IMG/VR virus record: IMGVR_UViG_3300020442_000005 | Location: 209,026-273,025 of that record | Direction: 5' to 3' (one strand) | DNA length: 64,000 nt | Shown here: one piece after another, positions 10,921-64,000 of the stretch | Numbering within the stretch: position 1 is the first letter of the stretch | How the letters are laid out: each line of letters starts with the position of its first letter | The notes under the pieces: generated by a model | Told to the model about the DNA's origin: nothing | The model's input: the letters and a program-made list of their open reading frames with translations, nothing else | The model's database searches: none | Translations under genes and position numbers: made by a program

Positions 10921-13900
10921 GTTTTGATAAAAATCAGATCTATATTATTGATGGTGCAATGGGCACCGAAATACAGAAAAGACAGGTTGAATCCAAATTC
11001 TTTAAATACGAAGGAATCGACTGCGATGGCTTTAATGATATTTTGGTGCTCACCAAACCCGGCCTGATAAAAGATATACACGGTGATTACATCAACTCCG
11101 GCGCAAATATCATTGAGACAAATACCTTTAACGCTAATTATATTTCAGCGTTAGATTACGGACTTAGTGATGGAGCGATCGATAAAATAAACTTTAGCGC
11201 TGCCAAAATTGCAAAACAGGCTGCAAAAAAATCTAAAGAAGAGGTGTATGTAGCCGGTGTTTTAGGCCCGACTTCAAAAACTTTAAGCATGTCACCAAAC
11301 GTTACAGATCCTTCTTATAGAGATATCACGTACCATGAATTACTCAATGCTTATAAAGCCGCAACTGAAAATCTAATTCGTGGTGGCGCAGATTTGATTT
11401 TAATCGAAACAGTCTTTGACACACTTAATGCCAAGGCTGCGATTGAGGCTGTGAGACTGGTAGGAGAAGATATTCCTATCATGATATCAGGTACAATCGT
11501 TGACATGTCTGGTCGGACTTTATCTGGCCAGACTGTCGAGGCTTTTTGGAATTCCATTAAACACGCAAGGCCTATTAGTGTTGGTTTGAATTGTGCGCTA
11601 GGTGCAAAGCAAATGGATCCATTTCTGCGGCGTCTAGCAGACGTCAGTGGTTGCGCAATCAGCGCACATCCGAACGCGGGGTTACCAAACGAATTAGGTG
11701 AATACGACCAATCCCCGTCTGATATGGCAAACTATATTAAGAACTGGGCAAAAGCCGGGATTGTAAATATAATAGGTGGATGTTGTGGGTCGACTCCGGA
11801 TCACATCAAAAAGATAGCCAACACCGTAAAAAAGTTTAAACCCAAAAGGCACATAACCAGAAGTTTTAATTTGGACCGGTCAATGATTCTTTCTGGTTTA
11901 GAGGTCTTTGATAGCAAAGGAAAGAACTTTATTAATATTGGCGAGCGAACAAACGTCACTGGGTCTTCAAGGTTTAAAAAATGTATCGTAGAAAAAAGAT
12001 ATGATGATGCGTTGAATATTGCTCGTTCGCAGATTCTAAATGGCGCCCAGATTATCGATATCAATATGGACGATGGACTCTTAGATTCTAAGAGTGAAAT
12101 GATTAATTTTTTAAAAATGTTGGCATGCGAGCCTGATATTGCAAAAGTACCAATCATGCTTGATTCTTCGAAGTGGGATATCCTATCGGAAGCCATGAGA
12201 TGGATACAAGGGAAAGGTATTGTAAATTCAATTTCTCTTAAAGATGGAGAATCAGACTTTCTTGCCCGGGCAAAAGAAATTGTTTCGTGCGGACACGCTT
12301 TTGTGGTAATGGCTTTTGATGAAAAAGGGCAGGCTGATACTTTTGATAGAAAAATAGAGATATGTGAACGCGCTTATTGGATTTTAGTTAACGCAGGAAT
12401 AAAGCCACAAGACATTATTTTTGATCCAAATATCTTTGCAATCGCCACCGGGATAGAAGAACACGACAACTATGCAGTCGACTTTATAACTGCTACTGCA
12501 TGGATTAAAAAGAACCTGCCTGGATGCTACGTCTCCGGAGGATTATCAAACCTATCATTCTCTTTCAGGGGAAATCCTCGCGTGAGAGAGATGATGCATT
12601 CCGTCTTTTTGTTTCATGCTATCAAAGCCGGGTTGGACATGGCGATTGTAAACGCAGGTCAACTAATGGTGTACGACCAGATCGATCAAGGCCATCGGGA
12701 CATTGTTGAATCTGTTATTTTAAATAAGCATGAAGAAGCATCGGCACAGCTTTTAGAATTAGCAAAATCTCTATCTGGTAAAACCCGAGTAGAATCTAAC
12801 GGGTTCCAAGAATGGCGTAACGAAGAGGTTGAAGAAAGAATATCTTTTGCCCTTATAAACGGTATCGATAAATTTATCGTCGAAGATGTCAAGGAATGTT
12901 ACAACAAAATAGGCTCGGCATTAAACGTTGTTGAAGGACCGTTGATGGATGGTATGAACGTAGTTGGAGACCTTTTTGGCTCCGGTAAAATGTTTTTACC
13001 TCAAGTAGTCAAGTCAGCGCGTGTAATGAAAAAAGCAGTCTCGTGGCTCGAGCCTTTTATGGTTGGCACAGATGAAGCAATACAGAGGGAAAAAATACTG
13101 CTTGCCACAGTTAAAGGCGACGTTCATGACATTGGAAAAAACATTGTTAGTATAGTTCTTCAATGTAATGGATACGAGATAGTTGATCTAGGAGTCATGG
13201 TTCCATTAGAAAAGATACTAGAGGAAGCTGATAAACACCAGGTTGCAGCAATCGGTCTTAGCGGATTGATTACACCAAGTTTAGATGAGATGGTTAAAGT
13301 TGCTCGAGCAATGAATGAAAGACAAATGGATATACCTTTACTAATTGGTGGAGCAACAACATCAAAAGTTCACACGGCAATCAAAATATCTCCGGAGTAC
13401 TCAAAAACAGTATATATACAAAATGCATCGATTGCAGTCGGAATTGTTAATGACGTGTTAAGTAAGAGTGATGCATTCGATAAGATTAATAGGGATTATG
13501 AAGAAACTAGGGAGAGAAGAAACTCGAGAAAGCAAACGTTTGTAAGTGTTTCTGATGCAAGAAGAAATGCATATCAGCTAAAAGGAAAGCCACAGATTCC
13601 AGATAACTTTGGAATGACTATCAAAAGCAAAGCTTCAGTTTCAGAGATCATACCATATATTGATTGGGCACCGTTTGCAATGACTTGGGGAATGAAACCA
13701 AAAGATCTTACAAGCCAAGTCGGTAAAGATCTAATGAAGGATGCCCGAGAAATGCTTCGAAAACTTGATGATAAGATTGTAGTTAACTATTCATTTGCTA
13801 TCGATAAATGTACAAAAACAAATAATGACGATGTACTGGTGAAAAGACCGGATAAATCAACGACTTTTAATTTCATGAGGCAAGCAACAAAAAAATCTCG

Positions 13901-14429
13901 GCCGAATCTTTGTTTGACAGATTTCTTACATCAGGAAGATTGGATAGGGTCTTTTGCGGTCTGGGTGTGCGGAATCGATAAGAGAGCAGACATGCTCAGA
14001 TTAGCCAACGATGATTACGGATCGATCATGATGCAAGCGCTTGGGGATAGACTCGCCGAAGCAACGGCTGAATGGCTACACGAGAGGGTTCGTAAGTCAT
14101 GGTGGGGTTACTCAAAAGACGAAAACTTGACAAATACCGACCTTATAAAAGAGCGTTACTTAGGAATCAGGCCAGCACCCGGATATCCAGCCTGTCCGGA
14201 TCATACCCAGAAGATAAAAATATTAAACTGGTTAGAAATTAGTGATACAATAGAGCTGACCGAGGGTTTAACAATGTCGCCAAAGTCCGCAATATGTGGT
14301 TGGTACTTTGCAAGTGCAGAATCAAAATACTTCGGTGTTGGAAAAATACCAGACGAATACGTAGAAGATTTAAAAGAAAGAAATCCATATCTAAAAAAAT
14401 ACAAAAATCATATAACGGGAGTTAGTTAA
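10914..14429 (+). CDS. metH: cobalamin-dependent methionine synthase
   Basis: [40 protein letters not shown] (DxHxxG), [12 protein letters not shown] activation domain. Confidence 0.97.
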
Positions 14430-14430
14430 C

Positions 14431-15759
14431 ATGGATAAATTTACAGATTACAAAGTCGCAGATACAAATCTATGGCGTTGGGGAAAAGACGAGGTAGAAT
14501 TAGCAGAACATGAAATGCCAGGCCTCATGGCACTGCGTGAAAAGTATGCAGCAGACAAACCACTTCAAGGAGCTAGAATTGCCGGGTGTTTGCATATGAC
14601 AATCCAGACCGCTGTTTTAATCGACACTCTTGTCGAGCTTGGCGCAGATGTACGTTGGATGACGTGTAATATCTATTCGACACAAGATCACGCCGCGGCA
14701 TACATTGCAGAGCAGCAAATCCCAGTGTTTGCTTGGAAGGGAATGACCGAGGATGACTATGAGGAATGTTTAGAAAAAGTCTTATGGTTCGATGAAGGCG
14801 TAGGTCCAAACATGATTCTAGATGACGGTGGTGACCTCACAGGATATATCCTGAAGAACCATCCGGATCTTTATAAGGATATTAAGGGTATCTCCGAAGA
14901 GACAACTACTGGTGTTTTAAGATTGGTAGAGTATCAAAACGATGGGGTCCTGCCGGTACCTTGCTTTAACGTTAACGATTCTGTTACTAAATCAAAGTTT
15001 GACAACAAGTACGGATGTCGTGAGTCGTGTGTTGATGCGATTCGAAGAGCGACAGACATCATGATGGCGGGAAAAGTTGCGACTGTGGCTGGCTATGGCG
15101 ACGTAGGTAAAGGTTCTGCTGCTAGTCTGTCCGCGGCTGGCTGTCGTGTTATTGTCACTGAGATCGATCCAATCTGTGCATTGCAAGCCGTAATGGACGG
15201 ATTCCAGGTTTTACCTATGGACGAAGCGGTTAAGCAATCCGACATTGTAGTTACAGCAACCGGTAATTGCGACGTGGTTAGATCAGAACATTTTTCCAAT
15301 ATGAAAGACAACGTTATCGTTTGTAACATTGGACATTTTGATAACGAGATCGATGTAGCATGGTTAAACGAGAACTTCGAATCCAAAAACGTAAAACCAC
15401 AGGTCGACGTATATTATCTTCCGTCCGGACTGACTGATAATAAACCAAATCCTCCGTACAAGAAGATCGTTCTGTTAGCACAGGGAAGACTAGTGAATCT
15501 AGGTTGCGCCACCGGGCATCCAAGCTTTGTTATGTCCTGTTCTTTTGCAAATCAGGTACTTGCACAGATCGAGTTATTTTTGAACTCTGATAATTATGAA
15601 AATAAAGTTTATGTGCTCCCAAAGATTCTTGACGAAGAGGTTGCCAGATTGCATCTCGATCACGTTGGCGCCAAACTCGATAAACTTTCAAACGTTCAGT
15701 CGAAATACATTGGCGTGAAACAAACCGGTCCATTTAAGTCTGACGAATATCGTTACTAG
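14431..15759 (+). CDS. ahcY: S-adenosylhomocysteine hydrolase
   Basis: [67 protein letters not shown]. Confidence 0.97.
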
Positions 15760-18072: not shown

Positions 18073-18122
18073 GGTACCGGTGTCAAAACACCAAACAGTT
18101 CTTTTAAATCGCAGTAAACTTT

Positions 18123-18206
18123 GCTCGGGTGGCGGAATCGGTAGACGCACCAGACTTAAAATCTGTTGTCCGTATGGGCGTGAGGGTTCAAGTCCCTCTT
18201 CGAGCA
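18123..18206 (+). tRNA. tRNA-Leu(TAA)
   Basis: cloverleaf with long variable arm, CT-TAA-AA loop, GGTTCAAGTCC T arm; no encoded CCA. Confidence 0.93.
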
Positions 18207-18366
18207 TTACAATAGGGAATACCTGAGGGGAAGGTATTTTAAATGAGATTGACCTGAAGCTAGATATTACGCTGGGATCCACAACGAACTTTTATATGAT
18301 CGACCGCTATAATCTAGAACATCCGCCCTTTCATTTCTTTAAACAATAATTAATTAGGTTATACAA

Positions 18367-18756
18367 ATGGAATTAACAAATGGCCAGATTGAGATAGGTA
18401 TAGTGTTTTTCTATGGCTTTGTAGCAGGATTAGTTGTCAGTATTCTGTATGCTCATGAGCGTTGGAAAAACTTCAACTACGACGAGGAACGACGGTTACA
18501 ATATCAAAAAGAAACGGATGAAAGAAGAAGGATACGCCTTGAGAAATATAAAGAGATGAGAAATCCTGAATCTCAGTTACGAGTGATACATAAGCAGGAA
18601 GAATATATAAGAGAATTACTCTTAGAGCAAGCTAGACTGCACAAACAACTCAATGCATTCGCTGGATGGCCTGAATATGAACACTTCCACGAAGATCTTA
18701 TGAAAAAAATCGACAAACGATTTGAATCTTTACGAATTGAACATGATAACATTTGA
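18367..18756 (+). CDS. hypothetical membrane protein
   Basis: N-terminal TM helix followed by coiled coil. Confidence 0.65.
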   Translation: MELTNGQIEIGIVFFYGFVAGLVVSILYAHERWKNFNYDEERRLQYQKETDERRRIRLEKYKEMRNPESQLRVIHKQEEYIRELLLEQARLHKQLNAFAGWPEYEHFHEDLMKKIDKRFESLRIEHDNI

Positions 18757-18781
18757 ACAACTACAGGACTATCTGTATAAT
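18752..18781 (+). promoter_or_regulatory. sigma70-like promoter of tRNA cluster
   Basis: TTGAAC-N17-TATAAT with TG just upstream of the -10. Confidence 0.65.
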
Positions 18782-18803
18782 AACTAGGTAAACAAAACTT
18801 CAT

Positions 18804-18877
18804 GCATCCATAGCTCAGCTGGATAGAGCATCCGCCTTCTAAGCGGACGGTCGCAGGTTCGAATCCTGCTGGATGTA
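18804..18877 (+). tRNA. tRNA-Arg(TCT)
   Basis: TCCGC-CTTCTAA-GCGGA anticodon arm, canonical D and T arms. Confidence 0.95.
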
Positions 18878-18881
18878 CTTT

Positions 18882-18953
18882 TGGTCTGTAGTGTAATAGG
18901 TAACACACCAGTTTTTGGCACTGGCGTTCTAGGTTCAAGTCCTGGCAGACCAG
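18882..18953 (+). tRNA. tRNA-Gln(TTG)
   Basis: TGGTCTG/CAGACCA acceptor, CCAGT-TTTTGGC-ACTGG anticodon arm. Confidence 0.92.
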
Positions 18954-18991
18954 CTTTTATACAACTTTAAACAATAGGGTATTATTATTTA

Positions 18992-19142
18992 TGGGTCTAG
19001 TTAACCTCGAGGGTTCGAACCCCTCTATGACCAAGCAGGCAGGGAGCAATGACTAGATGTCGCCAACAGAAAGATATTCACCAGTATCTCCTTTTGGTTG
19101 ATAAGCCTTGGGATAGGAAAGTGGTGAGTCCTATCCCAAAGT
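18992..19142 (+). ncRNA. candidate structured ncRNA containing a tRNA T-arm
   Basis: own promoter-like site 18956-18988; GAGGG-TTCGAAC-CCCTC T arm enclosed by GTCTAGTTA/TGACTAGAT; perfect 11-bp hairpin 19108-19139. Confidence 0.55.
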
Positions 19143-19164
19143 TCCATCCTTAACTTCATCACAC

Positions 19165-19237
<73 letters not shown>

Positions 19238-19240
19238 TAG

Positions 19241-19313
19241 GCGGGAATAGCTCAGTTGGTAGAGCACCACGTTGCCAACGTGGAAGTCGCGAGTTCAAGT
19301 CTCGTTTCCCGCT
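19241..19313 (+). tRNA. tRNA-Gly(GCC)
   Basis: GCGGGAA acceptor, CCACG-TTGCCAA-CGTGG. Confidence 0.95.
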
Positions 19314-19318
19314 CTTTT

Positions 19319-19391
19319 GGACACTTAGCTCAGCGGTCAGAGCATCCGACTCATAATCGGCAGGTCCAGGGTTCAATCCCCTGAGTGTCCA
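19319..19391 (+). tRNA. tRNA with CAT anticodon, probably Ile2 (lysidine, reads AUA) rather than Met
   Basis: GACTCATAATC anticodon arm and GG..C.TTAGCTCAG start resemble bacterial tRNA-Ile2; lacks the initiator GGG/CCC stem. Confidence 0.85.
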
Positions 19392-19396
19392 CTTTC

Positions 19397-35128: not shown

Positions 35129-36064
35129 TTAGCGACCTGCGAGTTCTTTCCAGTTTTCGTTGTTGCTCCATGGACCTTCAACAAATGGCAATCCTGGGAA
35201 ACGTCGTGTATAGTTTGGACTTTGTTTCTTACGAAGCTTCCATAACGCGTTTCGGCTATTCTCGGCTCCCACAACAGGTGCTAGCATATTTGAAACAAGT
35301 GTCGTATCATAATATGCAGACAGCTTATCAAAGAAGTCCTTAGGAATCACTGTGCCAATCAAGTGTTTATAATCTTTCTGAGAGGCAAAAGTTCCATAAA
35401 CCTCTTCGATCTCAAAACCCAAATCTTCCATCAAAGCGCCTAGTGCTTCATATGTCATTTCATTGGGATGGTTATCAGCCGCACCAGTCTTCTCATCGTA
35501 GCAAGGAGTAGAAACCCAGAAAACAGATTCGTCGTGCATCAGGTCCTGGCCTCGTCGAAGAAACTCGTTCGCTTGCCATGGTTGTACGTGCTCAATAACT
35601 TCTAAGCAAACAATGGTATCAAATGTTTTGTTCTCACCAAACTCATGAGTCAAAAAATCTGCACGTGCATGAAGCTGTACGTTTTTAAGTGAGTTTGATT
35701 TACCAGACAGAACAGTGTTTTCCAATCGTTCTGTCCCTCTTGTCTTAAACTTATCAGCAGCTTCCAGACCAACGTATTCCGAACATTTTACTCGGTTACA
35801 GTGCATTGAATTAAGAAGCTGAAGTTCTGGTCCACATCCAATGTCTAGAACGGATGGTCCATTACCTTCATTTAGTTTACGAGTCTTTGTAGAAAGAAGA
35901 TGTTTTCCTACGACGTGTGAATAACGAGCGGCATGTGCGATATAGTCGCGGTGTAATTGAACGCGTTGCATTGCGGTCTCCACTGATAGATGTGTACGAT
36001 TAAACTCTTCGCGATATCGCTTGAGTTCCTCTTTGTTGATTTGTTTAGTTTCAATAACTGACAT
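35129..36064 (-). CDS. class I SAM-dependent methyltransferase
   Basis: H.ARY, VLDIGCG, FDTIVCLEVIEHV, VSTP; AGGAG SD. Confidence 0.88.
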   Translation of the reverse strand: MSVIETKQINKEELKRYREEFNRTHLSVETAMQRVQLHRDYIAHAARYSHVVGKHLLSTKTRKLNEGNGPSVLDIGCGPELQLLNSMHCNRVKCSEYVGLEAADKFKTRGTERLENTVLSGKSNSLKNVQLHARADFLTHEFGENKTFDTIVCLEVIEHVQPWQANEFLRRGQDLMHDESVFWVSTPCYDEKTGAADNHPNEMTYEALGALMEDLGFEIEEVYGTFASQKDYKHLIGTVIPKDFFDKLSAYYDTTLVSNMLAPVVGAENSRNALWKLRKKQSPNYTRRFPGLPFVEGPWSNNENWKELAGR

Positions 36065-50871: not shown

Positions 50872-51441
50872 ATGAAAAATTTACGACAATACATAAGACG
50901 GATAATAAGCGAAGCCTTAGATGGAAGTGGCAATCAGCAAGAAGCAGCGTACGCTGTAATATACACCGCTGGTTACCTCGACTCATCTGACAGAGGGCTT
51001 GGTCAGCTTATCAACAAAAATCCAAAGCTTGGCGAGCAGGGTGATAAGTGGATTCCGCTCGATGATGCCCTTGCTAACGTGCATTCTGCTTTAATTGCAG
51101 CGGCTTCTGCTATTAAAAGAGAAAATCCAGAACTCGACCTTTCGGAGGAGAGTAGTATTCTTCGAGAGGGTCAGGCTGCTGGTCAGGCAGACTTCCGCGA
51201 AAGCATATACAAGTACATTGAACAAGTAGAATCTCTTGTCAATAGAGAATCGCCTATGGGAATGAGTGCTGCTGAAGGCTTGAGAGTCTTTGGAGTCAAA
51301 ACTCTGTCTCCCGGGGTTACGCTGGCAGATACCGCAGTCGCAGACGTGAGAGATCTGATCTCTTTAATGGACGACGACAATGTTCTGAGCTGGCTGGACG
51401 AAGTTGAAACCATGAAACAGTACGGTGAGCTCAAACTATAA
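50872..51441 (+). CDS. leader plus unknown helical domain
   Basis: MKNLRQYIRRIISE. Confidence 0.7.
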   Translation: MKNLRQYIRRIISEALDGSGNQQEAAYAVIYTAGYLDSSDRGLGQLINKNPKLGEQGDKWIPLDDALANVHSALIAAASAIKRENPELDLSEESSILREGQAAGQADFRESIYKYIEQVESLVNRESPMGMSAAEGLRVFGVKTLSPGVTLADTAVADVRDLISLMDDDNVLSWLDEVETMKQYGELKL

Positions 51442-52055
51442 TGAAACATTTAAGAAATTACATAAGAAAGATTCTTCTAACTGAAGCAATGAAAACCCCA
51501 GCCATGCTACCAGATGACACTGTCATTGTAATAAAACCAGTACGTCATTATATAACAATTTATTACGGTAAAGCTGATAATCCTTCTAGTAAGAGTGGAA
51601 CTGATGGTGTTGGAATCCTTGGAACAATTTCTATATTTCCAACCGGTCGACGCTCACCGGACGGCTACTTTGTCGGACTTGGTAACTGCGATGGAGCTTG
51701 GATGGTCGGACTTGCAGCTGCATCCGACGGTTGGGGTCCGCTGTTATATGACGTCGCAATCGAATGGGCAACTCAAAACGGCGGAGGACTAATTTCCGAT
51801 CGTGGAGCTGTAAGTGTACCAGCTCAAAAAGTATGGTCCTACTACGAGCAAAACAGAGATGACGTGACAGCCCACCAGCTTGATGACCTCAATAATACTC
51901 TTACACCTGAGGAGGAAGATAACTGCGATCAATCGATTGGTAGGCGGACAATAACTGGTATGTATAATACCTGGCAAGACAGTCAATTAAGTAAGCGGTA
52001 TACAAAGCCGCCCACAACAATGAACGCATTAGGCGATAAACTAGTGATTTTATGA
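51441..52055 (+). CDS. leader plus GNAT-like acetyltransferase (close paralog of 49039)
   Basis: MKHLRNYIRKILLTE; C-terminal half nearly identical to 49039 gene. Confidence 0.72.
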   Translation: MKHLRNYIRKILLTEAMKTPAMLPDDTVIVIKPVRHYITIYYGKADNPSSKSGTDGVGILGTISIFPTGRRSPDGYFVGLGNCDGAWMVGLAAASDGWGPLLYDVAIEWATQNGGGLISDRGAVSVPAQKVWSYYEQNRDDVTAHQLDDLNNTLTPEEEDNCDQSIGRRTITGMYNTWQDSQLSKRYTKPPTTMNALGDKLVIL

Positions 52056-52774
52056 AGAACTTGCGGCAATACATAAGACAGACAATTCTCGAGAATAAGG
52101 AGGCATTTTTAGATGATCTCCTGTCAAATCCAAATTGGGATGAAGGTGCTCGCGATGCATTTAGTGACGAAACATACGATGACTATATTCAAAAATATCC
52201 TAAAGCCAGGAAACGCGGCAGATTAGTCAAGCAGGTGTGGGCTAAACACGTGGATAGAGAATATATTAATTCACTCATATACATTCACTGGGGCGGTATT
52301 TCAAGTATATACAATATTTTAAAATCGTCAATCGATGGCAGTCCAAAGAAGGATGAATTAGCATGCTCAGGTTATGAACCAGGAAAAGTCGCTGAAAGAA
52401 ACAGAGTCGGCAGTACAGGTTTGGTTATTGAAGGGCATGTCTCTTTGTTTGGAAACCACATGAACGACGTATTTTCAGGCGAGCTAGATCTAATTAAAAA
52501 GTTTAATCCAGAAATGGGTCCAACATCAGGCTACAACAGAGGTACTCTTTCGGCAATTGCCGACACGTTTATCTTGGACAGAGAATCTTTTATCCATCGA
52601 AACAATCCGGATCAAAACCGTACTGAGGCTTTTTTAGACAATTGGAAGATCAAAGCATTAGTGTTCGAGCCTGATAGTGATCTCTGGCGAGGTCAGGCGC
52701 AAAAGGATTTGGTAAATTCAATCCGCACAGAATTCAAGTTAGACATCCCCATCCTTAGACCTAGAGATCTGTAA
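52052..52774 (+). CDS. leader plus DNW-family protein (putative ART fold; paralog of 47891)
   Basis: MKNLRQYIRQTILE; H.DRE..NSL.Y.HW...DELAC...TEAFLDNW. Confidence 0.6.
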   Translation: MKNLRQYIRQTILENKEAFLDDLLSNPNWDEGARDAFSDETYDDYIQKYPKARKRGRLVKQVWAKHVDREYINSLIYIHWGGISSIYNILKSSIDGSPKKDELACSGYEPGKVAERNRVGSTGLVIEGHVSLFGNHMNDVFSGELDLIKKFNPEMGPTSGYNRGTLSAIADTFILDRESFIHRNNPDQNRTEAFLDNWKIKALVFEPDSDLWRGQAQKDLVNSIRTEFKLDIPILRPRDL

Positions 52775-53439
52775 TGAAACATTTGCGACAATACATAAGA
52801 GGAATACTTCTAACTGAAGGTATGAAAACAGAGGCCGATCTGCCTGACGGCATTGGTATTATAATCAGGCAAAGAGCCTGGGAAGACAATCCGTCTAATA
52901 TTGTAATATCGTACTACAACTTGAATACAGAATATCCTCTGGAAACCGACAGAGAAAACATCATCCCATGGGGTATGGTCACCCTCGGCTTAGTATATCC
53001 ATATGAGCCGGCATACAACGGGCAAGATGAACGTTTCAATCTCCCGGAAGATACTAGTAATCTTACATGCGGAAATGCTTTTCAGATTTTCACCACCGAT
53101 GCTGCTGATGGATGGGGTCCCTTACTTTATGACGTCGCAATCGAATGGGCTACAATGAATGGTAACGGACTAATATCTGATCGATCTGGCGTGTCCGAGG
53201 ATGCTCAAGCCGTTTGGGAATACTACATGTACAATAGACCGGACGTCCAAAAGTTCCAATGCGATGATCACTTAAACACCTTAACTGCCACGTTAGATGA
53301 TAACGTCGATATGAATATACCCATGGCTGACGGCCGCTCATATTTTCCGGAAGATTTAGAGAATGATCCCCTAGGAAAAAGATACACGAAGGAACCGACA
53401 CGGATAAGACAATTAGGCGATAAACTGGTGATCCGATGA
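52774..53439 (+). CDS. leader plus GNAT-like acetyltransferase
   Basis: MKHLRQYIRGILLTE; GWGPLLYDVAIEWA, GLISDR..VS..A..VW. Confidence 0.72.
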   Translation: MKHLRQYIRGILLTEGMKTEADLPDGIGIIIRQRAWEDNPSNIVISYYNLNTEYPLETDRENIIPWGMVTLGLVYPYEPAYNGQDERFNLPEDTSNLTCGNAFQIFTTDAADGWGPLLYDVAIEWATMNGNGLISDRSGVSEDAQAVWEYYMYNRPDVQKFQCDDHLNTLTATLDDNVDMNIPMADGRSYFPEDLENDPLGKRYTKEPTRIRQLGDKLVIR

Positions 53440-53807
53440 AACACTTGCGGCAATACATAAGATTATTATTGGAAAATAACGACGAGATGATAGAGCACAT
53501 TAATGGAATCATCGAAGATTATAAGCTTAGTGATATAGGTCCGGACCACTGGAACCAACTTGACGATATGATCGAAGATATCTTCCCAGGCACAAAACCG
53601 CCAAACATGAAAGTCTGGTCTGCCGCCCATCCATTGAATGGTGAGGTTTTCGAATCGTATGTGACACAAGAAGAAGCCTTGACCGTTCACCTTAGAGATG
53701 CAAACATTGTGCCGGCCGATAATGATGGCACCGAAGTTCAAACGCCAGAGATTCTAGATTGGGATCCAACTGGATATGCTTACATTATGAGTTGGGAAAT
53801 CAAATGA
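53436..53807 (+). CDS. leader plus acidic unknown domain
   Basis: MKHLRQYIRLLLE. Confidence 0.7.
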   Translation: MKHLRQYIRLLLENNDEMIEHINGIIEDYKLSDIGPDHWNQLDDMIEDIFPGTKPPNMKVWSAAHPLNGEVFESYVTQEEALTVHLRDANIVPADNDGTEVQTPEILDWDPTGYAYIMSWEIK

Positions 53808-54637
53808 AAAACTTGCGGCAATACATAAGAAAGATACTATCAGAAGTGTACGAGCTCACACCAGAAGAAGACAAGACTCGGCGAGAAGATTTTGCTTATC
53901 AATCTGCAGCTAGACGCTCCTTAGGCCTTCAAACATCGGCCGAGATTATAGAAGACAGGGAAGAATTGCAGAATTACCAGGCGCGACTTAAAAGCTCGAC
54001 GGAAGGTAAAGAACTAATCCGAAGATTTATGAAAGGAACAGACGTCACTATCATGCACAGCATAAACTATTCCGGATATGCTGCTTTAAGAGGTTATAAA
54101 TCCTTCGATAGAGTCGATAAAAGTATGCCTTTCCAAAGATGGATTGGGCAACACGGCCGAAAGGGAAAAGACGTGCTCTCATGTGTAGCATCCGACCAAC
54201 CGCTCGGTATGGACTTCTTAATCGGAAATGATAATCCAGCTGCAGCTCACGGATTCGGCTTCATTATGAAAGGATACCCGGTCTACATTTCCGAAACAGA
54301 CGTAATGTCTCAAACACTAGGAGCTATCCCGCCAGGTTTAGTAAAGCACCAAGAACAATCCGGTGTGGCAAAACGACCCGGTGACACTTCCGCAGGAATA
54401 ATCGAATTGGATTTCGGCTGGGCTGGAGAAGTGCTGCTCGACAACTGGACGATCATCGGCACGTACATGGATATAAGCGGCAACAATGATTTAGCTGTAT
54501 TTGAGACACTTGCTCGGGATTCGATCAGCATGTTCAAACCCGTCCCTTTCTATGTTTACGATGACGGATATTTTGTCGGCAAAATAACAGATAAAGATTC
54601 TATGTTTGAGGTAAGAGAAAAACTATTCGGATTTTAA
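53804..54637 (+). CDS. leader plus LDNW-family protein (putative ART fold; paralog of 47064)
   Basis: MKNLRQYIRKILSE-VYEL; IMH...LSC...KGYPV...DVMSQT...GEVLLDNW. Confidence 0.6.
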   Translation: MKNLRQYIRKILSEVYELTPEEDKTRREDFAYQSAARRSLGLQTSAEIIEDREELQNYQARLKSSTEGKELIRRFMKGTDVTIMHSINYSGYAALRGYKSFDRVDKSMPFQRWIGQHGRKGKDVLSCVASDQPLGMDFLIGNDNPAAAHGFGFIMKGYPVYISETDVMSQTLGAIPPGLVKHQEQSGVAKRPGDTSAGIIELDFGWAGEVLLDNWTIIGTYMDISGNNDLAVFETLARDSISMFKPVPFYVYDDGYFVGKITDKDSMFEVREKLFGF

Positions 54638-54663
54638 AACCAAAAAAACCGCGGCTAAACATC

Positions 54664-55068
54664 ATGAACTACGTTCCCAAAACCAACGACCTTATTCTCT
54701 TCACAGAACCCACCTCAGGAATCCTATCAGACTTTGGTATCAATGACAAACACTACAACTGGTCCCACTCCATTGTAAACGTAGAACCTAACCAATCCGC
54801 CCTTGTCATTGACACCTATACTATAGACAACAACCGTTCCAACCGCTCCTTCACCAACCCCACTCTTTCCAATACTCTCAACATTGCTATAGAACTTACA
54901 AGACACCACAAACCCTACATTCCACAACCTCCCACCATTCTCATTGTCTCCCTTTCAGACCTCATCATTGAAGTCCTATTCGATCCAGACCTACTTCAAC
55001 CCATTCCCCACCCGTCTAACCTACTCCCACCTAAACATCCTCCCCTACAAATGACCCTGGCTAGATAA
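54664..55068 (+). CDS. hypothetical protein in extremely G-poor DNA
   Basis: 134 aa ORF; composition atypical. Confidence 0.45.
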   Translation: MNYVPKTNDLILFTEPTSGILSDFGINDKHYNWSHSIVNVEPNQSALVIDTYTIDNNRSNRSFTNPTLSNTLNIAIELTRHHKPYIPQPPTILIVSLSDLIIEVLFDPDLLQPIPHPSNLLPPKHPPLQMTLAR

Positions 55069-55227
55069 CCATAGGACATGGCTAAACCATATACCACCTT
55101 GCATACCTAGCATTCACACAAAAGCACCCTAAGGATTCGCAAGAATGAAAAGTGACTAGGTGTATAGGCTACCGGGCTTAGCTCCCTCTCACGCGACCTC
55201 GGGCATCTATCGGTTCGGTCACTCTCG

Positions 55228-55416
55228 GTGTAACAGAAACAGAAACAATTTGTTTCACTTGTTACACTTTGCTCGCTCATCCGAAAGCATGGCGGTTCCA
55301 TAATAGTAGGACAGGCCTGTCAAAGCAATTGTTTCATGAAACATGTTTCTGTTTCTTTGGTGTTTCACTATAATTGAAATTGGTTTTGGTTTCGCTATAA
55401 TTGAAATTGATTTCAC
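55228..55416. repeat. cluster of GAAACA/TGTTTC inverted and direct repeats (left)
   Basis: GTGTAACA..TGTTACAC inverted repeat 55228-55267; TGTTTCATGAAACA palindrome; 21-nt direct repeat at 55362 and 55389. Confidence 0.8.
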
Positions 55417-55567
55417 TTGCAAAAGTTATCGGCCCCCTACAAAAGCAGTCAGGTTCCGGCAGGTGATACGCGACTATGGAAAGCAGGGATGGATGAAAAG
55501 CCGGGATAGGGTTGCCGTAGAGCAGATGGAGAAAAAGAGAAATAAAGAGAAATAAAATGTGAAAGTT

Positions 55568-55622
55568 TGTGTAAGCTGCTCTACGGCGGGATACATTATA
55601 AGTGTAAGGAGAAACCTTGCAA
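55568..55622 (+). promoter_or_regulatory. conserved early promoter plus 5' hairpin (copy 3)
   Basis: TGTGTA-N18-TACATTATAAGTGTAAGGAGAAACCTTGCAA. Confidence 0.8.
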
Positions 55623-55655
55623 GTAACTTTCAATCCTAGTAAAAGCGGAGTTCAT

Positions 55656-56408
55656 ATGAACCTATCAAATGTGACTGACATTGCATTCGGCACTAACATC
55701 CTAAACATTGAGATCCCTGAGCATCTCAAGCGCAAGTTCGCTACCGGCCTCGATTATTTCGACGGCGCACTCGGCGGTGAGGGTCTGACCCCATCTTGTG
55801 TAACTCTTTTCACCGGTACTCCTGGCGCAGGTAAGACCACCATGATGCTGACCATGGCTGATTCAATCACCAAGCGTGGCGGCGTGTGTCTCTTCAATAC
55901 TGCCGAAGAGTCTCTCTATCAGACTGCCATGACTGCACAGCGTTTGCGTCTCAAGAATGGTTTCGTCACCGGTAACACTGCCGATGTTCGGGAGCTGATC
56001 AAGGGTGCTCGCGAGATCATGAACAAGCGCGGCAACAAAGGCAAGCAGTTCGTTATGGTCGTCGATTCTCTTCAGTGTCTTGATGACGGTAAGTACTCTT
56101 CAGGTGTGAAGACCTCGGGTACGGCGATTCGTTGTCTTGAGCTGATCACTGACTTCTGTAAAGAGACTGGTGCTAGCGCGGTTATCATCAACCAGGTAAA
56201 CAAGCAAGGTAAGATGGCCGGTTCGAACAAGCTCAAGCATATGGTCGATGCTCACATGCACTTGTCTGTCGAGCAGAAAGAGACTGACCTGATTGGCTGT
56301 CGCGTGCTTGAGACTCAGAAGAACCGATTCGGTGGTTGTGGCCACATCTTCTTCTTGCACATGGGTAAGCGTGGTTTCAAGACTGTTGCTAAAGTCTCGG
56401 CCAGCTAA
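55656..56408 (+). CDS. radA: RadA/Sms-like ATPase (RecA fold only; no Zn finger, no Lon-like domain)
   Basis: GTPGAGKTT Walker A, AEES, VVDSLQ, K.G..AG...L.HMVD, KNRFG signature. Confidence 0.85.
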   Translation: MNLSNVTDIAFGTNILNIEIPEHLKRKFATGLDYFDGALGGEGLTPSCVTLFTGTPGAGKTTMMLTMADSITKRGGVCLFNTAEESLYQTAMTAQRLRLKNGFVTGNTADVRELIKGAREIMNKRGNKGKQFVMVVDSLQCLDDGKYSSGVKTSGTAIRCLELITDFCKETGASAVIINQVNKQGKMAGSNKLKHMVDAHMHLSVEQKETDLIGCRVLETQKNRFGGCGHIFFLHMGKRGFKTVAKVSAS

Positions 56409-56512
56409 CTGGTCAAGGTCCGGCAGGTACCTTAAAACCTGCTCTTGCAATTCTAATTTACTGGCCCGATTGCGGGTGTATAGAAAAAAGTTCAATAAAA
56501 ATGGAGTTCAAT

Positions 56513-57013
56513 ATGGATACTAAAATGGGAATGAGAGAGTTCAAAGTGATTTACACGGCCGATCAGAAGAGAAGGGACGAGGTACTTATCGTTGCAACAT
56601 GTGCCTTGGATGCTAAGCAGAGAGCCTGGCACCTTTTGCGCATGAACGGTGTTCCAAATCCTCATTGCATTAAGGCAATCGATAACAGCAAACCAACAAG
56701 TGGAGACAGTATGCATTATCCCAACTACACGCTCAGCGCGGCAATGATCGTTGACAGCCTCAAAGGTTTCGCGGATATGAGTCCGGAAGAGACCCTAGGC
56801 GATACACTTAACTTCAAAGTCAAAACAACTGAAGACCTTAAGGGGATCAAAGATGCCGCGGTCAAGTATGGCTGGTCTATCGAGTGGAACTGTAACGGCC
56901 GGTCCCCAAGCGACAAGCGTGCAGACTTTATGGATCCTCGCGCGGCTACTAGATCGATGACTAGCATCATCAACCTGTATTGCACAAAGACCAAGTCTGT
57001 AAAAGTAGCATAA
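56513..57013 (+). CDS. hypothetical early protein
   Basis: GGAG SD before ATG 56513; N-domain F.V.YTAD...AIDNS paralogous to 57033 gene. Confidence 0.7.
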   Translation: MDTKMGMREFKVIYTADQKRRDEVLIVATCALDAKQRAWHLLRMNGVPNPHCIKAIDNSKPTSGDSMHYPNYTLSAAMIVDSLKGFADMSPEETLGDTLNFKVKTTEDLKGIKDAAVKYGWSIEWNCNGRSPSDKRADFMDPRAATRSMTSIINLYCTKTKSVKVA

Positions 57014-57032
57014 CCAACCACCAGGAGTTCAC

Positions 57033-57209
57033 ATGAAACAGTTCAGAGTATTTTACACAGCCGATCGTCCTAATGGATCCCGATTCGAAGGCGAGATTAT
57101 CGTCGAAGCCATTGACAAGCCCGATGCCAAAGTCGCGGCTAAGCAGTGGTTGGAACAGACAGACCAGTGCGATAACGTGCGTAACCTGCAAGCGATCGAC
57201 AACAGCTGA
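57033..57209 (+). CDS. 58-aa protein (not in ORF track), paralog of 56513 N-domain
   Basis: AGGAG SD; MKQFRVFYTADRP...DAK..A...L.....AIDNS. Confidence 0.72.
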   Translation: MKQFRVFYTADRPNGSRFEGEIIVEAIDKPDAKVAAKQWLEQTDQCDNVRNLQAIDNS

Positions 57210-57318
57210 TGAAACAGAAACAAGTGAAACATATGTTACAGTTACACGAACAGAAAGCCGAATCATTTCAATGCTTTAGCAGCACAGAAACAAAAACAAT
57301 TGTTTCACTTGTTTCACT
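57209..57318. repeat. cluster of GAAACA/TGTTTC repeats (right)
   Basis: 57284-57318 nearly identical to 55233-55268. Confidence 0.8.
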
Positions 57319-57723
57319 CGCGGCAATAAGGAGTAGAGAGCATGGATACCAGGAAGCCAGAGAGGAAGAAGAGAGGATGGACCAACCGGTACGGGAAGAG
57401 GAGAGAATGCAGAGGAGAAGAGGCCGCATGACCAGCCCAGCACTACCAGCGACAAGCCCACCAGCAGGCCCCTCAGCCCTACCAGAAACGGCCCCCTTTC
57501 AGGCCCCAAATTTGGCCAAAAAAGGGCCCTCTCTAGGGCCCCTCTGGCATACTCAGTGGGAGCCTCTCGGGCCAGCCGGCGCTAAGCCTCGAAATTTTTT
57601 CCGGCGGAATTTTTTCAAACCAAACCAACTTTCATAGGAGAACATCGTGAATACAATTCTATTACTAGTCATCATTTACCTACTAATATGGTCATACAAT
57701 CCACCACATAAAAGGAGATAACC

Positions 57724-57909
57724 ATGTCACTTACATTTAGCGACGGAATGACATTCAACACAAGCGGACCATTAAGACTTGCGCATAGACAAGACGGTTG
57801 GTACGTAGTTGGCGACGGAATGTTGATCCCAGTTGACAGTCCAGAAGAAGGCGAGAGATTTATTGCAATACTGCAAAAGAAGGAAAACAAGGAGAATAAC
57901 CATGAATAA
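57724..57909 (+). CDS. small conserved phage protein
   Basis: AGGAG SD; FSDG..F.T.G.LR...R.DGWYVVG.G.LIPV.S.EE. Confidence 0.7.
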   Translation: MSLTFSDGMTFNTSGPLRLAHRQDGWYVVGDGMLIPVDSPEEGERFIAILQKKENKENNHE

Positions 57910-58198
57910 CCTAGAGTTCATAGCGACACACATACATAATAACCCAGATAACGCAACCTTTAGCGAGATACGTTTTAACTTGATGCTATACAAAGGATGG
58001 TCAGTGCAGAAAGCCATGGATCCAAGAAATCGAGGATGGAACAGCTGTTATTTCTCAAAGGGATACAAGCGACGATACCATGGAAAATTGTGGGTAAAGA
58101 CCGATCCGAACAATAGAAGATCCGGGTACATGCTCACAGAAAAGGGTAAAGAATATGTTGTAAATACAACGAAACCAGAATATAATAAAAGTGCATAG
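57902..58198 (+). CDS. hypothetical protein (paralog of 5116-5487)
   Basis: AGGAG SD; NNLEFIATHI...YF...Y.GKLWVK...LT.KG. Confidence 0.7.
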   Translation: MNNLEFIATHIHNNPDNATFSEIRFNLMLYKGWSVQKAMDPRNRGWNSCYFSKGYKRRYHGKLWVKTDPNNRRSGYMLTEKGKEYVVNTTKPEYNKSA

Positions 58199-63169: not shown

Positions 63170-64000
63170 ATGCTTCATGATATATTAAAACTAGTTGACC
63201 AAGTACCGGTTACAGCTGATTGGAAAACAAAGGTCACCCGGAGTGATGGTGTCGATTTAGATCCCATGCCCGGTTTTGACGCTATGTTTACATTTAGAAT
63301 TGAGCCGAAAGGTGCAAAACTTAAGAAAGTCATAGATCAAATGGCGCAAGAGTCACCAAAGTATAGAAAGATTTTTGGCAATCTGCCGACTTCACGATCA
63401 AAGCTTTTAAGAATTTTGACTGATAGACAGCCTGGTGAATCAATTGATTTAGCAAACGCGAAAGCTGCAGCAATCAAAGCGTTTTACCGCGCTCAAAAAC
63501 CATTGCTTGATCAAATTGAGGAATCTCTTAAAACGAACTATCCGGGTAAAGCATTCATATTTAATCCTATTGAGTTTAAATATTCTGGCGCCGGTGATAC
63601 AGTATGGGAGGCCTATGTTTATTCTGAGTCTGATAAGCCTGCTGAATTGCCGGAGCCTATAGAATTACCGGTTGAAACAACTCCGGAAGATTTAGTAGTC
63701 GCACCAGAGCCACGGCAGCCAAAAGCCGAAGACCCTGATGAGCTAATTAAAGTTGAAAAGCATATCCTGTCTCGCGAAGAAATAGATGCCATTATAGACG
63801 GCATTGTTGTCAAGCTTGGTCTCAATCCAAATACTGATCTTACCGTAGTTAATGATGCCGCGACAGCCTTAAATGAGTATGAGGACATGAGATATAGTTC
63901 CGTATTGCCCAAGATACCAACCGTCGTAGTTTCTGATTCGTATAACACGAGAAATCCACGCAAAGAAACATATAAAGACGGAACTGAAATGATACACATT
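63170..64000 (+). CDS. hypothetical protein, truncated by window end (not in ORF track)
   Basis: GGAG SD; MLHDILKLVDQVPV... reads open toward the window end. Confidence 0.65.
   Translation, partial: MLHDILKLVDQVPVTADWKTKVTRSDGVDLDPMPGFDAMFTFRIEPKGAKLKKVIDQMAQESPKYRKIFGNLPTSRSKLLRILTDRQPGESIDLANAKAAAIKAFYRAQKPLLDQIEESLKTNYPGKAFIFNPIEFKYSGAGDTVWEAYVYSESDKPAELPEPIELPVETTPEDLVVAPEPRQPKAEDPDELIKVEKHILSREEIDAIIDGIVVKLGLNPNTDLTVVNDAATALNEYEDMRYSSVLPKIPTVVVSDSYNTRNPRKETYKDGTEMIHI

What the first reader, a model, noticed from the sequence alone, without database searches (positions are those of the whole stretch)
55228..57318. radA cassette bracketed by near-identical palindromic GAAACA/TGTTTC repeat clusters
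Seen: ACAGAAACAGAAACAATTTGTTTCACTTGTTACACT (55233) and ACAGAAACAAAAACAATTGTTTCACTTGTTTCACT (57284) flank a 2-kb unit with the conserved promoter, radA and two paralogous genes. Many more GAAACA/GTAACA half-sites and a 21-nt repeat with 27-nt period lie in the largest non-coding stretches of the window. Inference: iteron-like protein binding arrays marking a replication origin, genome terminus/pac site or recombination boundaries.
Basis: partly seen in the sequence, partly recalled or inferred. Interest (0 to 1): 0.62.

Follow-up and report, generated by a model that had tools for sequence, protein, structure and literature searches.

The report
Conserved hexamer arrays flanking phage radA
Two dense clusters of the hexamer GAAACA/TGTTTC, found nowhere else in this 273-kb marine jumbo-phage genome, bracket a small RadA-like helicase module and are conserved under selection in related phages. 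They are almost certainly binding sites for a DNA-binding protein that controls this locus, not genome ends or a mobile element.

Summary
Window 55230-55368 and 57211-57318 hold 10 and 7 G[AT]AACA/TGTT[AT]C half-sites per 200 nt. These are the only such clusters in the whole 273-kb phage genome; simulated genomes reach at most 5. The two outer elements match at 33 of 36 positions. They bracket a RadA/Sms ATPase-only gene and two paralogous small genes, in the genome's two largest non-coding stretches.

A 289-kb relative (RadA 77% identical) shows the same picture: two clusters genome-wide, both flanking radA. About 25 marine metagenome contigs keep the bracket at variable distances. Among close relatives the five fixed hexamer positions never vary (0 of 80 columns, against 47 of 201 in other non-coding columns). 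Spacing between inverted half-sites varies from 0 to 6 nt without compensatory change. This points to protein recognition, not hairpins.

The arrays interleave with promoter-like boxes. The right array abuts a single-copy conserved GC-rich/AT-rich element.

Best reading (0.4): operator-type arrays controlling two tandem transcription units. The main rival is a replication origin (0.25). Genome termini, recombination boundaries and transposon ends are disfavoured. No read-level test was possible.

The parts
55230..55268 (.). Left outer array A: GTAACA GAAACA GAAACA att TGTTTC act TGTTAC. It has three contiguous hexamers on one arm and two 9-nt-spaced hexamers on the other.
   Evidence: Hexamer core positions are invariant in close relatives.
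55285..55311 (+). Conserved box AAGCATGGCGGTTCCATAATAGTAGGA between arrays A and B. It is promoter-like (ATAATA plus AGGA) and is analogous to the AAAAAGT..TAAAAT..CTTAGG boxes that sit between palindromes in relatives.
   Evidence: Invariant in the alignment. The architecture in relatives is shown. The promoter role is inferred.
55330..55368 (.). Left inner array B: TGTTTC at GAAACA TGTTTC TGTTTC tttgg TGTTTCAC. It includes the perfect 14-bp palindrome TGTTTCATGAAACA.
55362..55413 (+). Two tandem 27-nt units, each carrying a degenerate half-site plus TATAAT. Together they create a sigma-70-like promoter (TTGAAA at 55374-55379, 16-nt spacer, TATAAT at 55396-55401; 11 of 12 matches). This is a strain-specific 54-nt insertion.
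   Evidence: Absent from L127-L130.
55430..55517 (.). Conserved long-range inverted repeat CGGCCCCCTAC ... TAGGG(TT)GCCG enclosing about 75 nt, between the left arrays and the promoter.
   Evidence: The stem sequence is invariant in 9 relatives with no compensatory changes, so RNA structure is unproven.
55567..55625 (+). Copy of the phage's recurrent promoter motif (GTGTAA ... GATACATTATAAGTGTAAGGAGAAACCTTGCA) directly upstream of radA.
   Evidence: 6-8 copies genome-wide, all but one on the + strand, each just before a start codon. Also present in L001.
55656..56408 (+). RadA/Sms-like RecA-superfamily ATPase, 250 aa. It has a Walker A motif (GTPGAGKT) and a KNRFG motif, but no zinc finger and no Lon-like domain.
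   Evidence: Pfam KaiC/RecA/DnaB_C. tblastn hits to annotated RadA at about 30% identity. PDB RadA 5lkm residues 70-272, E 5e-16. It is the best-conserved gene of the region.
56513..57013 (+). 166-aa protein of unknown function. Its N-terminus is paralogous to the next gene. The gene is present or absent among relatives with 95-100% RadA identity.
   Evidence: no family match; paralogy; variable.
57033..57209 (+). 58-aa protein of unknown function, the last gene before the right arrays in the closest relatives.
57211..57245 (.). Right inner array B': GAAACA GAAACA agt GAAACA ta TGTTAC AGTTAC, starting 2 nt after the stop codon.
   Evidence: Copy number changes by whole 6-nt units among close relatives.
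57287..57318 (.). Right outer array A': GAAACA AAAACA att(g) TGTTTC act TGTTTC AC, followed by conserved TCGCGGCA.
57319..57650 (+). Conserved single-copy non-coding element. In order it has: a GA-rich stretch with an optional 29-aa ORF at about 57342-57431; 5-7 GGGCCC-type boxes; the invariant CATACTCAGTGG (57548-57559); GCTAAG; and two A/T tracts (AAATTTTTT at 57592-57600 and AATTTTTT at 57608-57615).
   Evidence: Alignments of 19-24 relatives. Single copy in the genome. No RNA-fold signal. It follows radA directly in relatives that lack arrays.
57902..58198 (+). 98-aa predicted winged-helix protein, conserved just right of the locus. It is a candidate binder of the arrays, but untested.
   Evidence: Homologues in 13 distinct relatives. 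AlphaFold2 model pLDDT 83. Nearly all top structural matches are winged-helix domains, mostly DNA-binding regulators, but they are weak: Foldseek E at least 0.3 and VIA Z at most 7.4. The protein is also present in three relatives without arrays, which counts against it.

Best explanation
The GAAACA/GTAACA hexamers are recognition sites for a sequence-specific DNA-binding protein. They are stacked in arrays of mixed orientation in two tandem intergenic control regions of an uncultured marine jumbo myovirus.

Each array is interleaved with promoter-like boxes and lies just upstream of a further conserved non-coding element and the next set of genes. The left array leads into the CCCTAC inverted repeat, the recurrent promoter and the radA module. 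The right array leads into the GC-rich/AT-rich element and the next genes.

I read the arrays as operator-type sites. A dedicated regulator would switch the promoters of these two neighbouring transcription units on or off. It could possibly bridge the two arrays and loop out the 2-kb radA module.

On this reading the 'bracketing' of radA follows from two adjacent units sharing one kind of upstream control array. It is not a cassette boundary.

Shown: the arrays are real, locus-specific, conserved and under selection at the hexamer core. Inferred: that a protein binds them, which protein it is, and the effect on transcription.
For: - Locus-specific in two independently assembled genomes. G000 and the 289-kb relative G001 each have only two clusters, both flanking radA.
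- Conserved in about 25 contigs with RadA at least 70% identical and in a 58% clade.
- Purifying selection on sequence. Core hexamer columns vary in 0 of 80 cases, against 47 of 201 for other non-coding columns (Fisher 5e-8). The W position toggles freely.
- No base-pair covariation between arms (Fisher p = 0.21), and inverted-pair spacing varies from 0 to 6 nt. This argues against a selected hairpin and for recognition of individual hexamers.
- Arrays grow and shrink by whole 6- or 9-nt units.
- Palindromes alternate with promoter-like boxes. These are ATAAAAT/TATAAAT-type boxes with CTTAGG in relatives, and the ATAATAGTAGGA box plus a sigma-70-like TTGAAA-16-TATAAT in the window.
- A predicted winged-helix protein is encoded immediately to the right.
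Against: - No binding protein is identified. The winged-helix match is weak, and that gene also occurs in relatives without arrays (L176, L179, L181).
- Variable spacing is unusual for classical dimeric operators.
- Some related lineages keep radA, the promoter and the GC-rich element but have no arrays. The arrays are therefore dispensable for basic expression.
- No transcript data are available.
- The promoter-like boxes are identified by resemblance only.
- The coupling of the right array to a single-copy conserved element would equally suit a replication origin.
Confidence: 0.4

Rival explanations
1. Replication origin. The hexamer arrays are initiator-binding sites. Together with the adjacent GC-rich boxes, the invariant CATACTCAGTGG core and the paired A/T tracts they would form a single-copy origin. 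A second array 2 kb upstream would act as a cis partner, as in P4 ori/crr, the P1 or F iteron arrays flanking rep, or the DnaA-box clusters flanking dnaA in Bacillus subtilis (analogies from my own knowledge).
For: - The arrays and the element are single-copy and sit in the two largest non-coding stretches of the genome.
- The non-coding element is better conserved than the neighbouring proteins. It stays linked to radA or the array across clades with RadA 58-100% identical, whatever genes flank it.
- It has no consensus RNA structure, so it probably acts as DNA.
- Promoters lie inside the region, and a recombination helicase gene sits in the middle.
Against: - The repeats are 6-bp units at 6- or 9-nt periods in mixed orientation. 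They are not 17-22-bp phased direct iterons.
- There are no DnaA boxes, and no window exceeds 78% A+T.
- No Rep-family protein is adjacent.
- The phage's DnaB-like helicase and DnaE polymerase lie 80-100 kb away.
- GC skew shows only a local dip caused by C-rich ORFs. It is otherwise monotonic, which is uninformative.
- Arrays are absent from some lineages that keep the element.
Confidence: 0.25
2. Hairpin elements acting in RNA or single-stranded DNA. These would be 3'-end stem-loops that terminate or stabilise transcripts of the preceding genes, paired with promoters for the next genes. This resembles the composite promoter-terminator motifs (PeSLs) of T4-like phages.
For: - Both clusters start right after a stop codon.
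- Array A folds at -16.5 kcal/mol (z -4.6). The whole right cluster folds at -34 kcal/mol (z -4.9).
- Loop lengths vary as expected for hairpins.
- The leftmost palindrome is often followed by a short T run in relatives.
- PeSLs are stem-loop plus promoter composites, with degraded or duplicated copies near indels (PMC4122927).
- The window's 2 x 27-nt promoter duplication looks like slippage.
Against: - There are no compensatory changes. GTAACA pairs with TGTTTC more often than with TGTTAC (15 against 7), and the association is not significant (p = 0.21).
- Arrays B and B' alone do not fold better than shuffles.
- The stems are A/T-rich, and the conserved outer right element lacks a U tract.
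- The stem sequence, not the pairing, is what is conserved.
- Palindromic units occur almost only at this locus, not as a series through variable regions.
Confidence: 0.12
3. Recombination boundaries. The two near-identical clusters would be substrates for homologous or site-specific exchange, swapping or excising the radA cassette.
For: - The content between the clusters varies from about 1.6 to 4.5 kb among relatives.
- The two outer elements are 92% identical direct repeats.
- Several short metagenome contigs break inside the clusters.
Against: - Sliding identity against L127, L128 and L134 shows no step at either cluster. The replaced segment (56500-57000) is internal and bounded by promoter/Shine-Dalgarno repeats.
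- No tyrosine or serine recombinase and no Y1 transposase was found in the genome.
- radA is a core gene that is also present where the arrays are absent.
- No contig with a deleted cassette was found among 160 loci.
- The outer flanks are not inverted repeats of each other.
Confidence: 0.07
4. Physical genome ends. The clusters would mark the boundaries of a roughly 2-kb direct terminal repeat, or a pac or cos site recognised by terminase.
For: - A collapsed terminal repeat would still assemble as a circle, so a circular assembly does not exclude it.
- radA lies within 13 kb of a contig end in 6 of 10 large related contigs.
Against: - The contig's own end overlap lies inside a 401-aa ORF.
- The one relative classed as having terminal repeats has a 141-bp overlap. 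That equals what I recall as MEGAHIT's default largest k-mer, so it looks like an assembly artefact.
- Distant relatives whose contigs end near radA have neither the arrays nor the element.
- Many contigs span both clusters with unique flanks on each side.
- The portal and capsid are T4-like. From general knowledge that usually goes with headful packaging.
Confidence: 0.04

Closest known systems
Lambda OL/OR operator clusters flanking the cI-rex region (own knowledge)
   Same: Two clusters of near-identical short palindromic sites lie about 2 kb apart. They overlap or abut promoters and bracket a small gene module. Long-range looping between the clusters is the known mechanism there.
   Different: - Lambda operators are fixed 17-bp dyads bound by a repressor encoded inside the bracket.
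- Here the units are 6-bp hexamers with variable spacing and orientation.
- Both clusters face the same way.
- No repressor is identified, and the only conserved bracketed gene is a RecA-family ATPase.
Arrays of short contiguous repeats bound by ribbon-helix-helix proteins (omega repressor heptads of pSM19035; ParR/parC of plasmid R1) (own knowledge)
   Same: Very short repeat units (7-11 bp) are stacked contiguously in direct or inverted orientation. The arrays flank or overlap promoters. Copy number changes by whole units.
   Different: No ribbon-helix-helix protein, ParA or ParM was found. Those plasmid arrays also serve as centromeres, and there is no evidence of that here.
Bipartite origins with repeat clusters on both sides of a gene (P4 ori/crr; P1 incC-repA-incA; Bacillus subtilis oriC around dnaA) (own knowledge)
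   Same: A gene is bracketed by two clusters of the same short protein-binding repeat, with an A/T-rich stretch beyond one cluster.
   Different: - In those systems the bracketed gene encodes the protein that binds the repeats. Here it is a RadA-like ATPase with no DNA-reading domain.
- The repeats are far shorter.
- There are no DnaA boxes.
PeSL composite promoter-terminator motifs of T4-like phages (PMC2839356, PMC4122927)
   Same: - Stem-loop plus promoter composites sit next to small variable ORFs in a phage with T4-like structural genes.
- Duplicated or degraded copies occur near indels.
- The stem sequence is conserved within a phage group.
   Different: - PeSLs occur as a series across the hyperplastic regions. 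Here palindromic units are confined to one locus.
- Indel breakpoints do not coincide with the clusters.
- There is no covariation or terminator-like U tract at the best-conserved element.
Chromosomal parS (TGTTNCACGTGAAACA) bound by ParB (own knowledge)
   Same: The half-sites TGTTTCAC and GTGAAACA are the two halves of the parS consensus.
   Different: - The arms are arranged and spaced differently. The best match to the 16-mer has 3 mismatches.
- No ParB N-terminal domain is encoded in the genome.

Membership tests
Iteron-type replication origin | Direct repeats of about 17-22 bp, phased at about one or two helical turns | tested here: not met
   The units are 6 bp. Tandem periods are 6 and 9 nt and the orientation is mixed.
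Iteron-type replication origin | Adjacent A/T-rich unwinding element and host DnaA boxes | tested here: inconclusive
   Two conserved A3T6-type tracts lie at 57592-57615. However, no 40-nt window exceeds 78% A+T, and there is no DnaA box with at most 1 mismatch in the locus.
Iteron-type replication origin | Cognate Rep initiator gene next to the repeats | tested here: inconclusive
   Only a 98-aa winged-helix-like protein is adjacent. No Rep family matched in Pfam, PHROGs or PDB sequences.
Iteron-type replication origin | Supports initiation of replication | not testable with these tools
   This needs infected cells or a cultured host. GC skew is uninformative because genes are co-oriented.
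Operator clusters of a phage repressor (lambda OL/OR type) | Multiple near-identical sites overlapping or abutting promoters | tested here: inconclusive
   Half-sites interleave with promoter-like boxes and with a sigma-70-like promoter. The promoters are predicted, not mapped.
Operator clusters of a phage repressor (lambda OL/OR type) | Fixed-length dyad-symmetric operator | tested here: not met
   The gap between inverted half-sites ranges from 0 to 6 nt with no preferred value.
Operator clusters of a phage repressor (lambda OL/OR type) | Repressor encoded within or next to the bracket | tested here: inconclusive
   The small genes inside the bracket are variable and match no family. The winged-helix candidate lies outside the bracket and also occurs without arrays.
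PeSL promoter-terminator motifs | Composite of stem-loop and promoter | tested here: inconclusive
   A palindrome-plus-box architecture is seen. Some units fold well, but there is no covariation.
PeSL promoter-terminator motifs | Many copies spread through hyperplastic regions, at indel breakpoints | tested here: not met
   Four of the 5 convergent units (G000) and 4 of 7 (G001) lie at this one locus. Identity profiles show no breakpoints at the clusters.
parS/ParB partition site | 16-bp palindrome TGTTNCACGTGAAACA and a ParB gene | tested here: not met
   The best match in the genome has 3 mismatches. There is no PF02195 hit in the genome.
Terminal repeat, pac or cos site | Physical DNA ends or doubled coverage at the boundaries | not testable with these tools
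Indirect evidence is against it: an ORF spans the contig junction, and many contigs read through the clusters.
Transposon, MITE or integron cassette | Recombinase or transposase, plus empty sites in relatives | tested here: not met
   There is no PF00589, PF00239 or PF01797 hit in the genome. Relatives without arrays still carry radA, and no excised form was seen.
RadA/Sms (the bracketed gene) | RecA-like ATPase core with Walker A and the KNRFG motif | tested here: met
   GTPGAGKT and QKNRFGG are both present in the translation. The protein matches RadA 5lkm residues 70-272 at E 5e-16.
RadA/Sms (the bracketed gene) | N-terminal C4 zinc finger and C-terminal Lon-like domain | tested here: not met
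   The 250-aa protein covers only chain residues 70-272 of the 452-residue RadA. Pfam finds no such domains.

The most novel reading that the evidence does not exclude
The arrays, the adjacent GC-rich/AT-rich single-copy element and the RadA-like helicase together would form the replication-initiation region of a cosmopolitan, uncultured lineage of marine jumbo phages. It would be a bipartite origin built from 6-bp recognition units. An unidentified protein bound to the arrays would hand the opened DNA to a recombination-type (RadA/RecA-family) helicase rather than to a classical initiator.
Probability: 0.12. Interest if true: 0.7.

Novelty: new member of a known kind. Interest (0 to 1): 0.4.

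Why it matters
Cis-acting control DNA is almost unknown for uncultured marine jumbo phages. Here a specific hexamer code, its array architecture and a linked single-copy conserved element are defined across dozens of ocean metagenome contigs. This gives a concrete target for finding the phage's origin or a key regulator, and a DNA bait for identifying the binding protein. It also shows that a phage RadA-like ATPase-only helicase is a core gene that sits in the genome's most elaborate non-coding region. If the site proves to be an origin, it would give a replication landmark for this lineage. If it is an operator system, it is a lineage-specific regulatory circuit of ordinary kind.

Tried and rejected
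- **Near-identical DNA in GenBank phages:** none found.
- **Rfam scan of the locus:** nothing credible.
- **RNA structure of the right non-coding element:** z-scores of -0.3 and -1.6, and RNAalifold gives zero consensus pairs over 24 relatives. The structured-RNA reading is rejected.
- **CCCTAC inverted repeat as RNA:** 9 conserved pairs but no compensatory change, so unproven.
- **The relatives' promoter box as a genome-wide motif in this genome:** absent.
- **Alternative hexamer clusters around radA in relatives below 62% identity, or in the 71-75% subclade:** none.
- **Outer flanks as large inverted repeats:** scores equal to shuffles.
- **Contig ends as termini:** rejected.
- **ParB, tyrosine recombinase, serine recombinase and Y1 transposase in the genome:** none.
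- **DnaA boxes at the locus:** none.
- **Pfam and PHROGs on 20 neighbouring ORFs, including the small cassette genes:** no family.
- **Profile of the winged-helix family against PDB sequences, and the protein atlas:** nothing usable.
- **Literature search for the hexamer pair in phages:** no paper.
- **Sequencing-run search:** I did not try to reach reads by another route, so coverage, read starts and excision junctions remain untested. Read laying, complex prediction and the large protein searches were not used.
Full report
**Context.** The window is the last 64 kb of a single 273,025-bp IMG/VR virus record.
- The record's first 165 bp repeat its last 165 bp with two mismatches. A 401-aa ORF runs across that junction. 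The record is therefore a circular assembly with an arbitrary break.
- It is a jumbo myovirus. It has a T4-like portal, a Gp23 capsid protein, a tail sheath, a DnaE-type polymerase, a DnaB-like helicase, ribonucleotide reductase, PrkA, a chaperonin, MetH, SAH hydrolase and six tRNAs.
- About 95% of coding capacity is on the + strand.
- Relatives come from marine metagenomes, including Tara.

- Both quoted strings sit where stated and match at 33 of 36 columns.
- Counting G[AT]AACA and TGTT[AT]C on both strands, only two 200-nt windows in the whole genome reach 5 sites. They hold 10 and 7 sites and lie at window about 55.2 and 57.2 kb. Forty Markov simulations never exceeded 5.
- The bracket holds a copy of a promoter motif that recurs 6-8 times in the genome, a RadA-like gene and two paralogous small genes.
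- The 27-nt-period repeat is two copies only. It is a 54-nt insertion private to this strain.
- Once two spurious ORFs are discounted, the stretches on either side of the module are the largest non-coding stretches of the genome.

**The bracketed gene.**
- The 250-aa protein has a Walker A motif and the RadA-specific KNRFG motif.
- It matches Streptococcus pneumoniae RadA (5lkm) over residues 70-272 only.
- It hits annotated RadA genes at about 30% identity.
- It lacks the zinc finger and the Lon-like domain.
- RadA/Sms is a DnaB-type helicase that extends RecA D-loops (PMC5512693).
- The phage has a separate DnaB-like helicase 100 kb away, so this is an accessory recombination helicase, not the replicative one.
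- It is the best-conserved gene in the region: 76-96% identical where its neighbours are 40-60%.

**Conservation of the bracket.**
- In the 288,697-bp relative G001 (RadA 77% identical, 36% G+C) there are again exactly two clusters genome-wide. Both flank radA.
- In contigs with RadA at least 70% identical and enough flank, clusters lie upstream at -230 to -2140 and downstream at +273 to +2038. The bracket is kept while the content between the clusters varies.
- A clade with RadA 58% identical has the right-hand array only.
- A 71-75% subclade, and all relatives below 58%, have no arrays and no substitute hexamer.

**What kind of element is it?**
- Selection acts on sequence. Among close relatives the five fixed positions of every hexamer are invariant (0 of 80 columns). 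The second (W) position varies in 4 of 16 columns, and the remaining non-coding columns in 47 of 201 (Fisher 5e-8).
- Arrays gain and lose whole 6- or 9-nt units.
- Inverted pairs are separated by 0 to 6 nt with no preferred value. Tandem units sit at 6- or 9-nt periods.
- The two hexamer variants are not paired concordantly: GTAACA lies opposite TGTTTC 15 times and opposite TGTTAC 7 times (p = 0.21).
- Some units fold well as single strands. However, what is conserved is the sequence, not the pairing.
- Together this fits recognition of individual hexamers by a protein. It fits poorly with a selected hairpin.

**Architecture.**
- In relatives the palindromes alternate with boxes of the form AAAAAGT..TAAAAT..CTTAGG. 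Where a gene follows, these boxes sit directly before the start codon. They therefore look like promoter plus ribosome-binding modules.
- In the window the equivalent box is AAGCATGGCGGTTCCATAATAGTAGGA, between arrays A and B. It is invariant in close relatives.
- The private 2 x 27-nt insertion adds a near-consensus sigma-70-type promoter flanked by degenerate half-sites.
- To the right of the left arrays come a conserved long-range inverted repeat, the recurrent promoter and radA.
- To the right of the right arrays comes a conserved element. It has TCGCGGCA, a GA-rich stretch, 5-7 GGGCCC-type boxes, an invariant CATACTCAGTGG and two A/T tracts.
- That element is single-copy and has no RNA-structure signal.
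- In array-free relatives the element follows radA directly. It therefore predates the arrays.

**Interpretation.** The two clusters are best seen as the same kind of control array placed ahead of two neighbouring transcription units.
- I favour operator-type transcriptional control, possibly with bridging of the two arrays (confidence 0.4).
- A 98-aa protein encoded just to the right is predicted to be a winged helix (pLDDT 83). Nearly all of its top structural matches are winged-helix domains, mostly DNA-binding regulators. The scores are weak, with VIA Z at most 7.4, and the gene also occurs without arrays. It is a candidate only.

**Rivals.**
- *Replication origin (0.25).* This cannot be excluded. 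The locus is single-copy, sits in the largest non-coding DNA, and is coupled to a conserved GC-rich/AT-rich DNA element. Against it, the repeats are not classical iterons, DnaA boxes are absent, no Rep protein is adjacent, and skew is uninformative.
- *Hairpin or PeSL-like elements (0.12).* They share the stem-loop-plus-promoter layout described for T4-like phages (PMC4122927). They fail on covariation and on being confined to one locus.
- *Recombination boundaries (0.07).* Identity profiles show no step at the clusters, and no recombinase or transposase is encoded.
- *Genome termini or pac (0.04).* The contig junction lies inside an ORF. A relative's 141-bp repeat equals what I recall as an assembler's largest k-mer. 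Many contigs read through both clusters. Distant relatives whose contigs end near radA lack the elements.

**Limits.**
Coverage, read starts and excision junctions could therefore not be examined, and I did not seek reads by another route.
- All functional statements beyond 'conserved, locus-specific, sequence-selected hexamer arrays' are inference.
- Analogies to lambda OL/OR, omega and ParR arrays, P4 ori/crr, P1 and F iterons, Bacillus subtilis oriC and parS come from my own knowledge. They were tested only as listed in the membership table.

Noticed in passing
window 10893-15759 (+), 35129-36064 (-): The phage encodes a full-length methionine synthase MetH (1178 aa, about 50% identical to bacterial MetH). 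Immediately next to it is S-adenosylhomocysteine hydrolase, and a SAM-dependent methyltransferase lies nearby. Together these form a near-complete activated-methyl cycle carried by a virus.
   Followed up: partly
window 18122-19392: A cluster of six tRNA genes (Leu-TAA, Arg-TCT, Gln-TTG, Thr-TGT, Gly-GCC, Met-CAT), all on the + strand.
   Followed up: no
window about 5485, 37188, 38401, 55588; genome 22073 and 182120: A recurrent promoter-like motif: GTGTnn, about 16 nt, then GATA(A/C)ATTATATATGTAAGGAGAAACCTTGCAGGT. The last part includes a short AAGG..CCTT hairpin. It has 6-8 copies, all but one on the + strand, each just upstream of a start codon. It is also present in relatives.
   Followed up: partly
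window 57440-57650: A single-copy non-coding element with 5-7 GGGCCC-type boxes, an invariant CATACTCAGTGG and two A3T6-type tracts. It is conserved across relatives with RadA 58-100% identical, whatever the flanking genes. It has no consensus RNA structure.
   Followed up: yes
window 55430-55517: A conserved inverted repeat (CCCTACRAA ... TTYGTAGGG) encloses about 75 variable nucleotides between the left arrays and the radA promoter. The stem sequence is invariant in 9 relatives, so neither structure nor protein binding is proven.
   Followed up: partly
window about 57342-57431: A small basic ORF (29 aa, MDTRKP...CRGEEAA) lies in the GA-rich stretch. Its start and end are conserved in some relatives (L141, L147, L180), but a 56-nt gap removes it in L127 and L128.
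   Followed up: no
window 63170-64000 joined to genome start: The record's 165-bp terminal overlap (2 mismatches) lies inside a 401-aa ORF that spans the junction. IMG/VR classes the record as linear and 82% complete, but it assembles as a circle.
   Followed up: yes
L059/L067 (IMGVR_UViG_3300020469_000008) and L056/L079 (IMGVR_UViG_3300006802_000087): Some more distant relatives carry two RadA-like paralogues 16-19 kb apart on one contig.
   Followed up: no
window 51441-52055 and 52774-53439: Two paralogous genes of unknown function lie upstream of the locus. Both hit the same ORF in relatives.
   Followed up: no
window 53000-56000: A local reversal of GC skew occurs although the ORFs here are on the + strand. 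The 134-aa ORF at 54664-55068 is unusually C-rich and G-poor, yet it has homologues in 15 related loci.
   Followed up: partly
L201 about 2610-2685, L199 about 1207-1280: In the clade with RadA 58% identical, a sequence that looks like a tRNA gene sits between radA and the right-hand array. This is by eye only; no tRNA scan was run on these loci.
   Followed up: no
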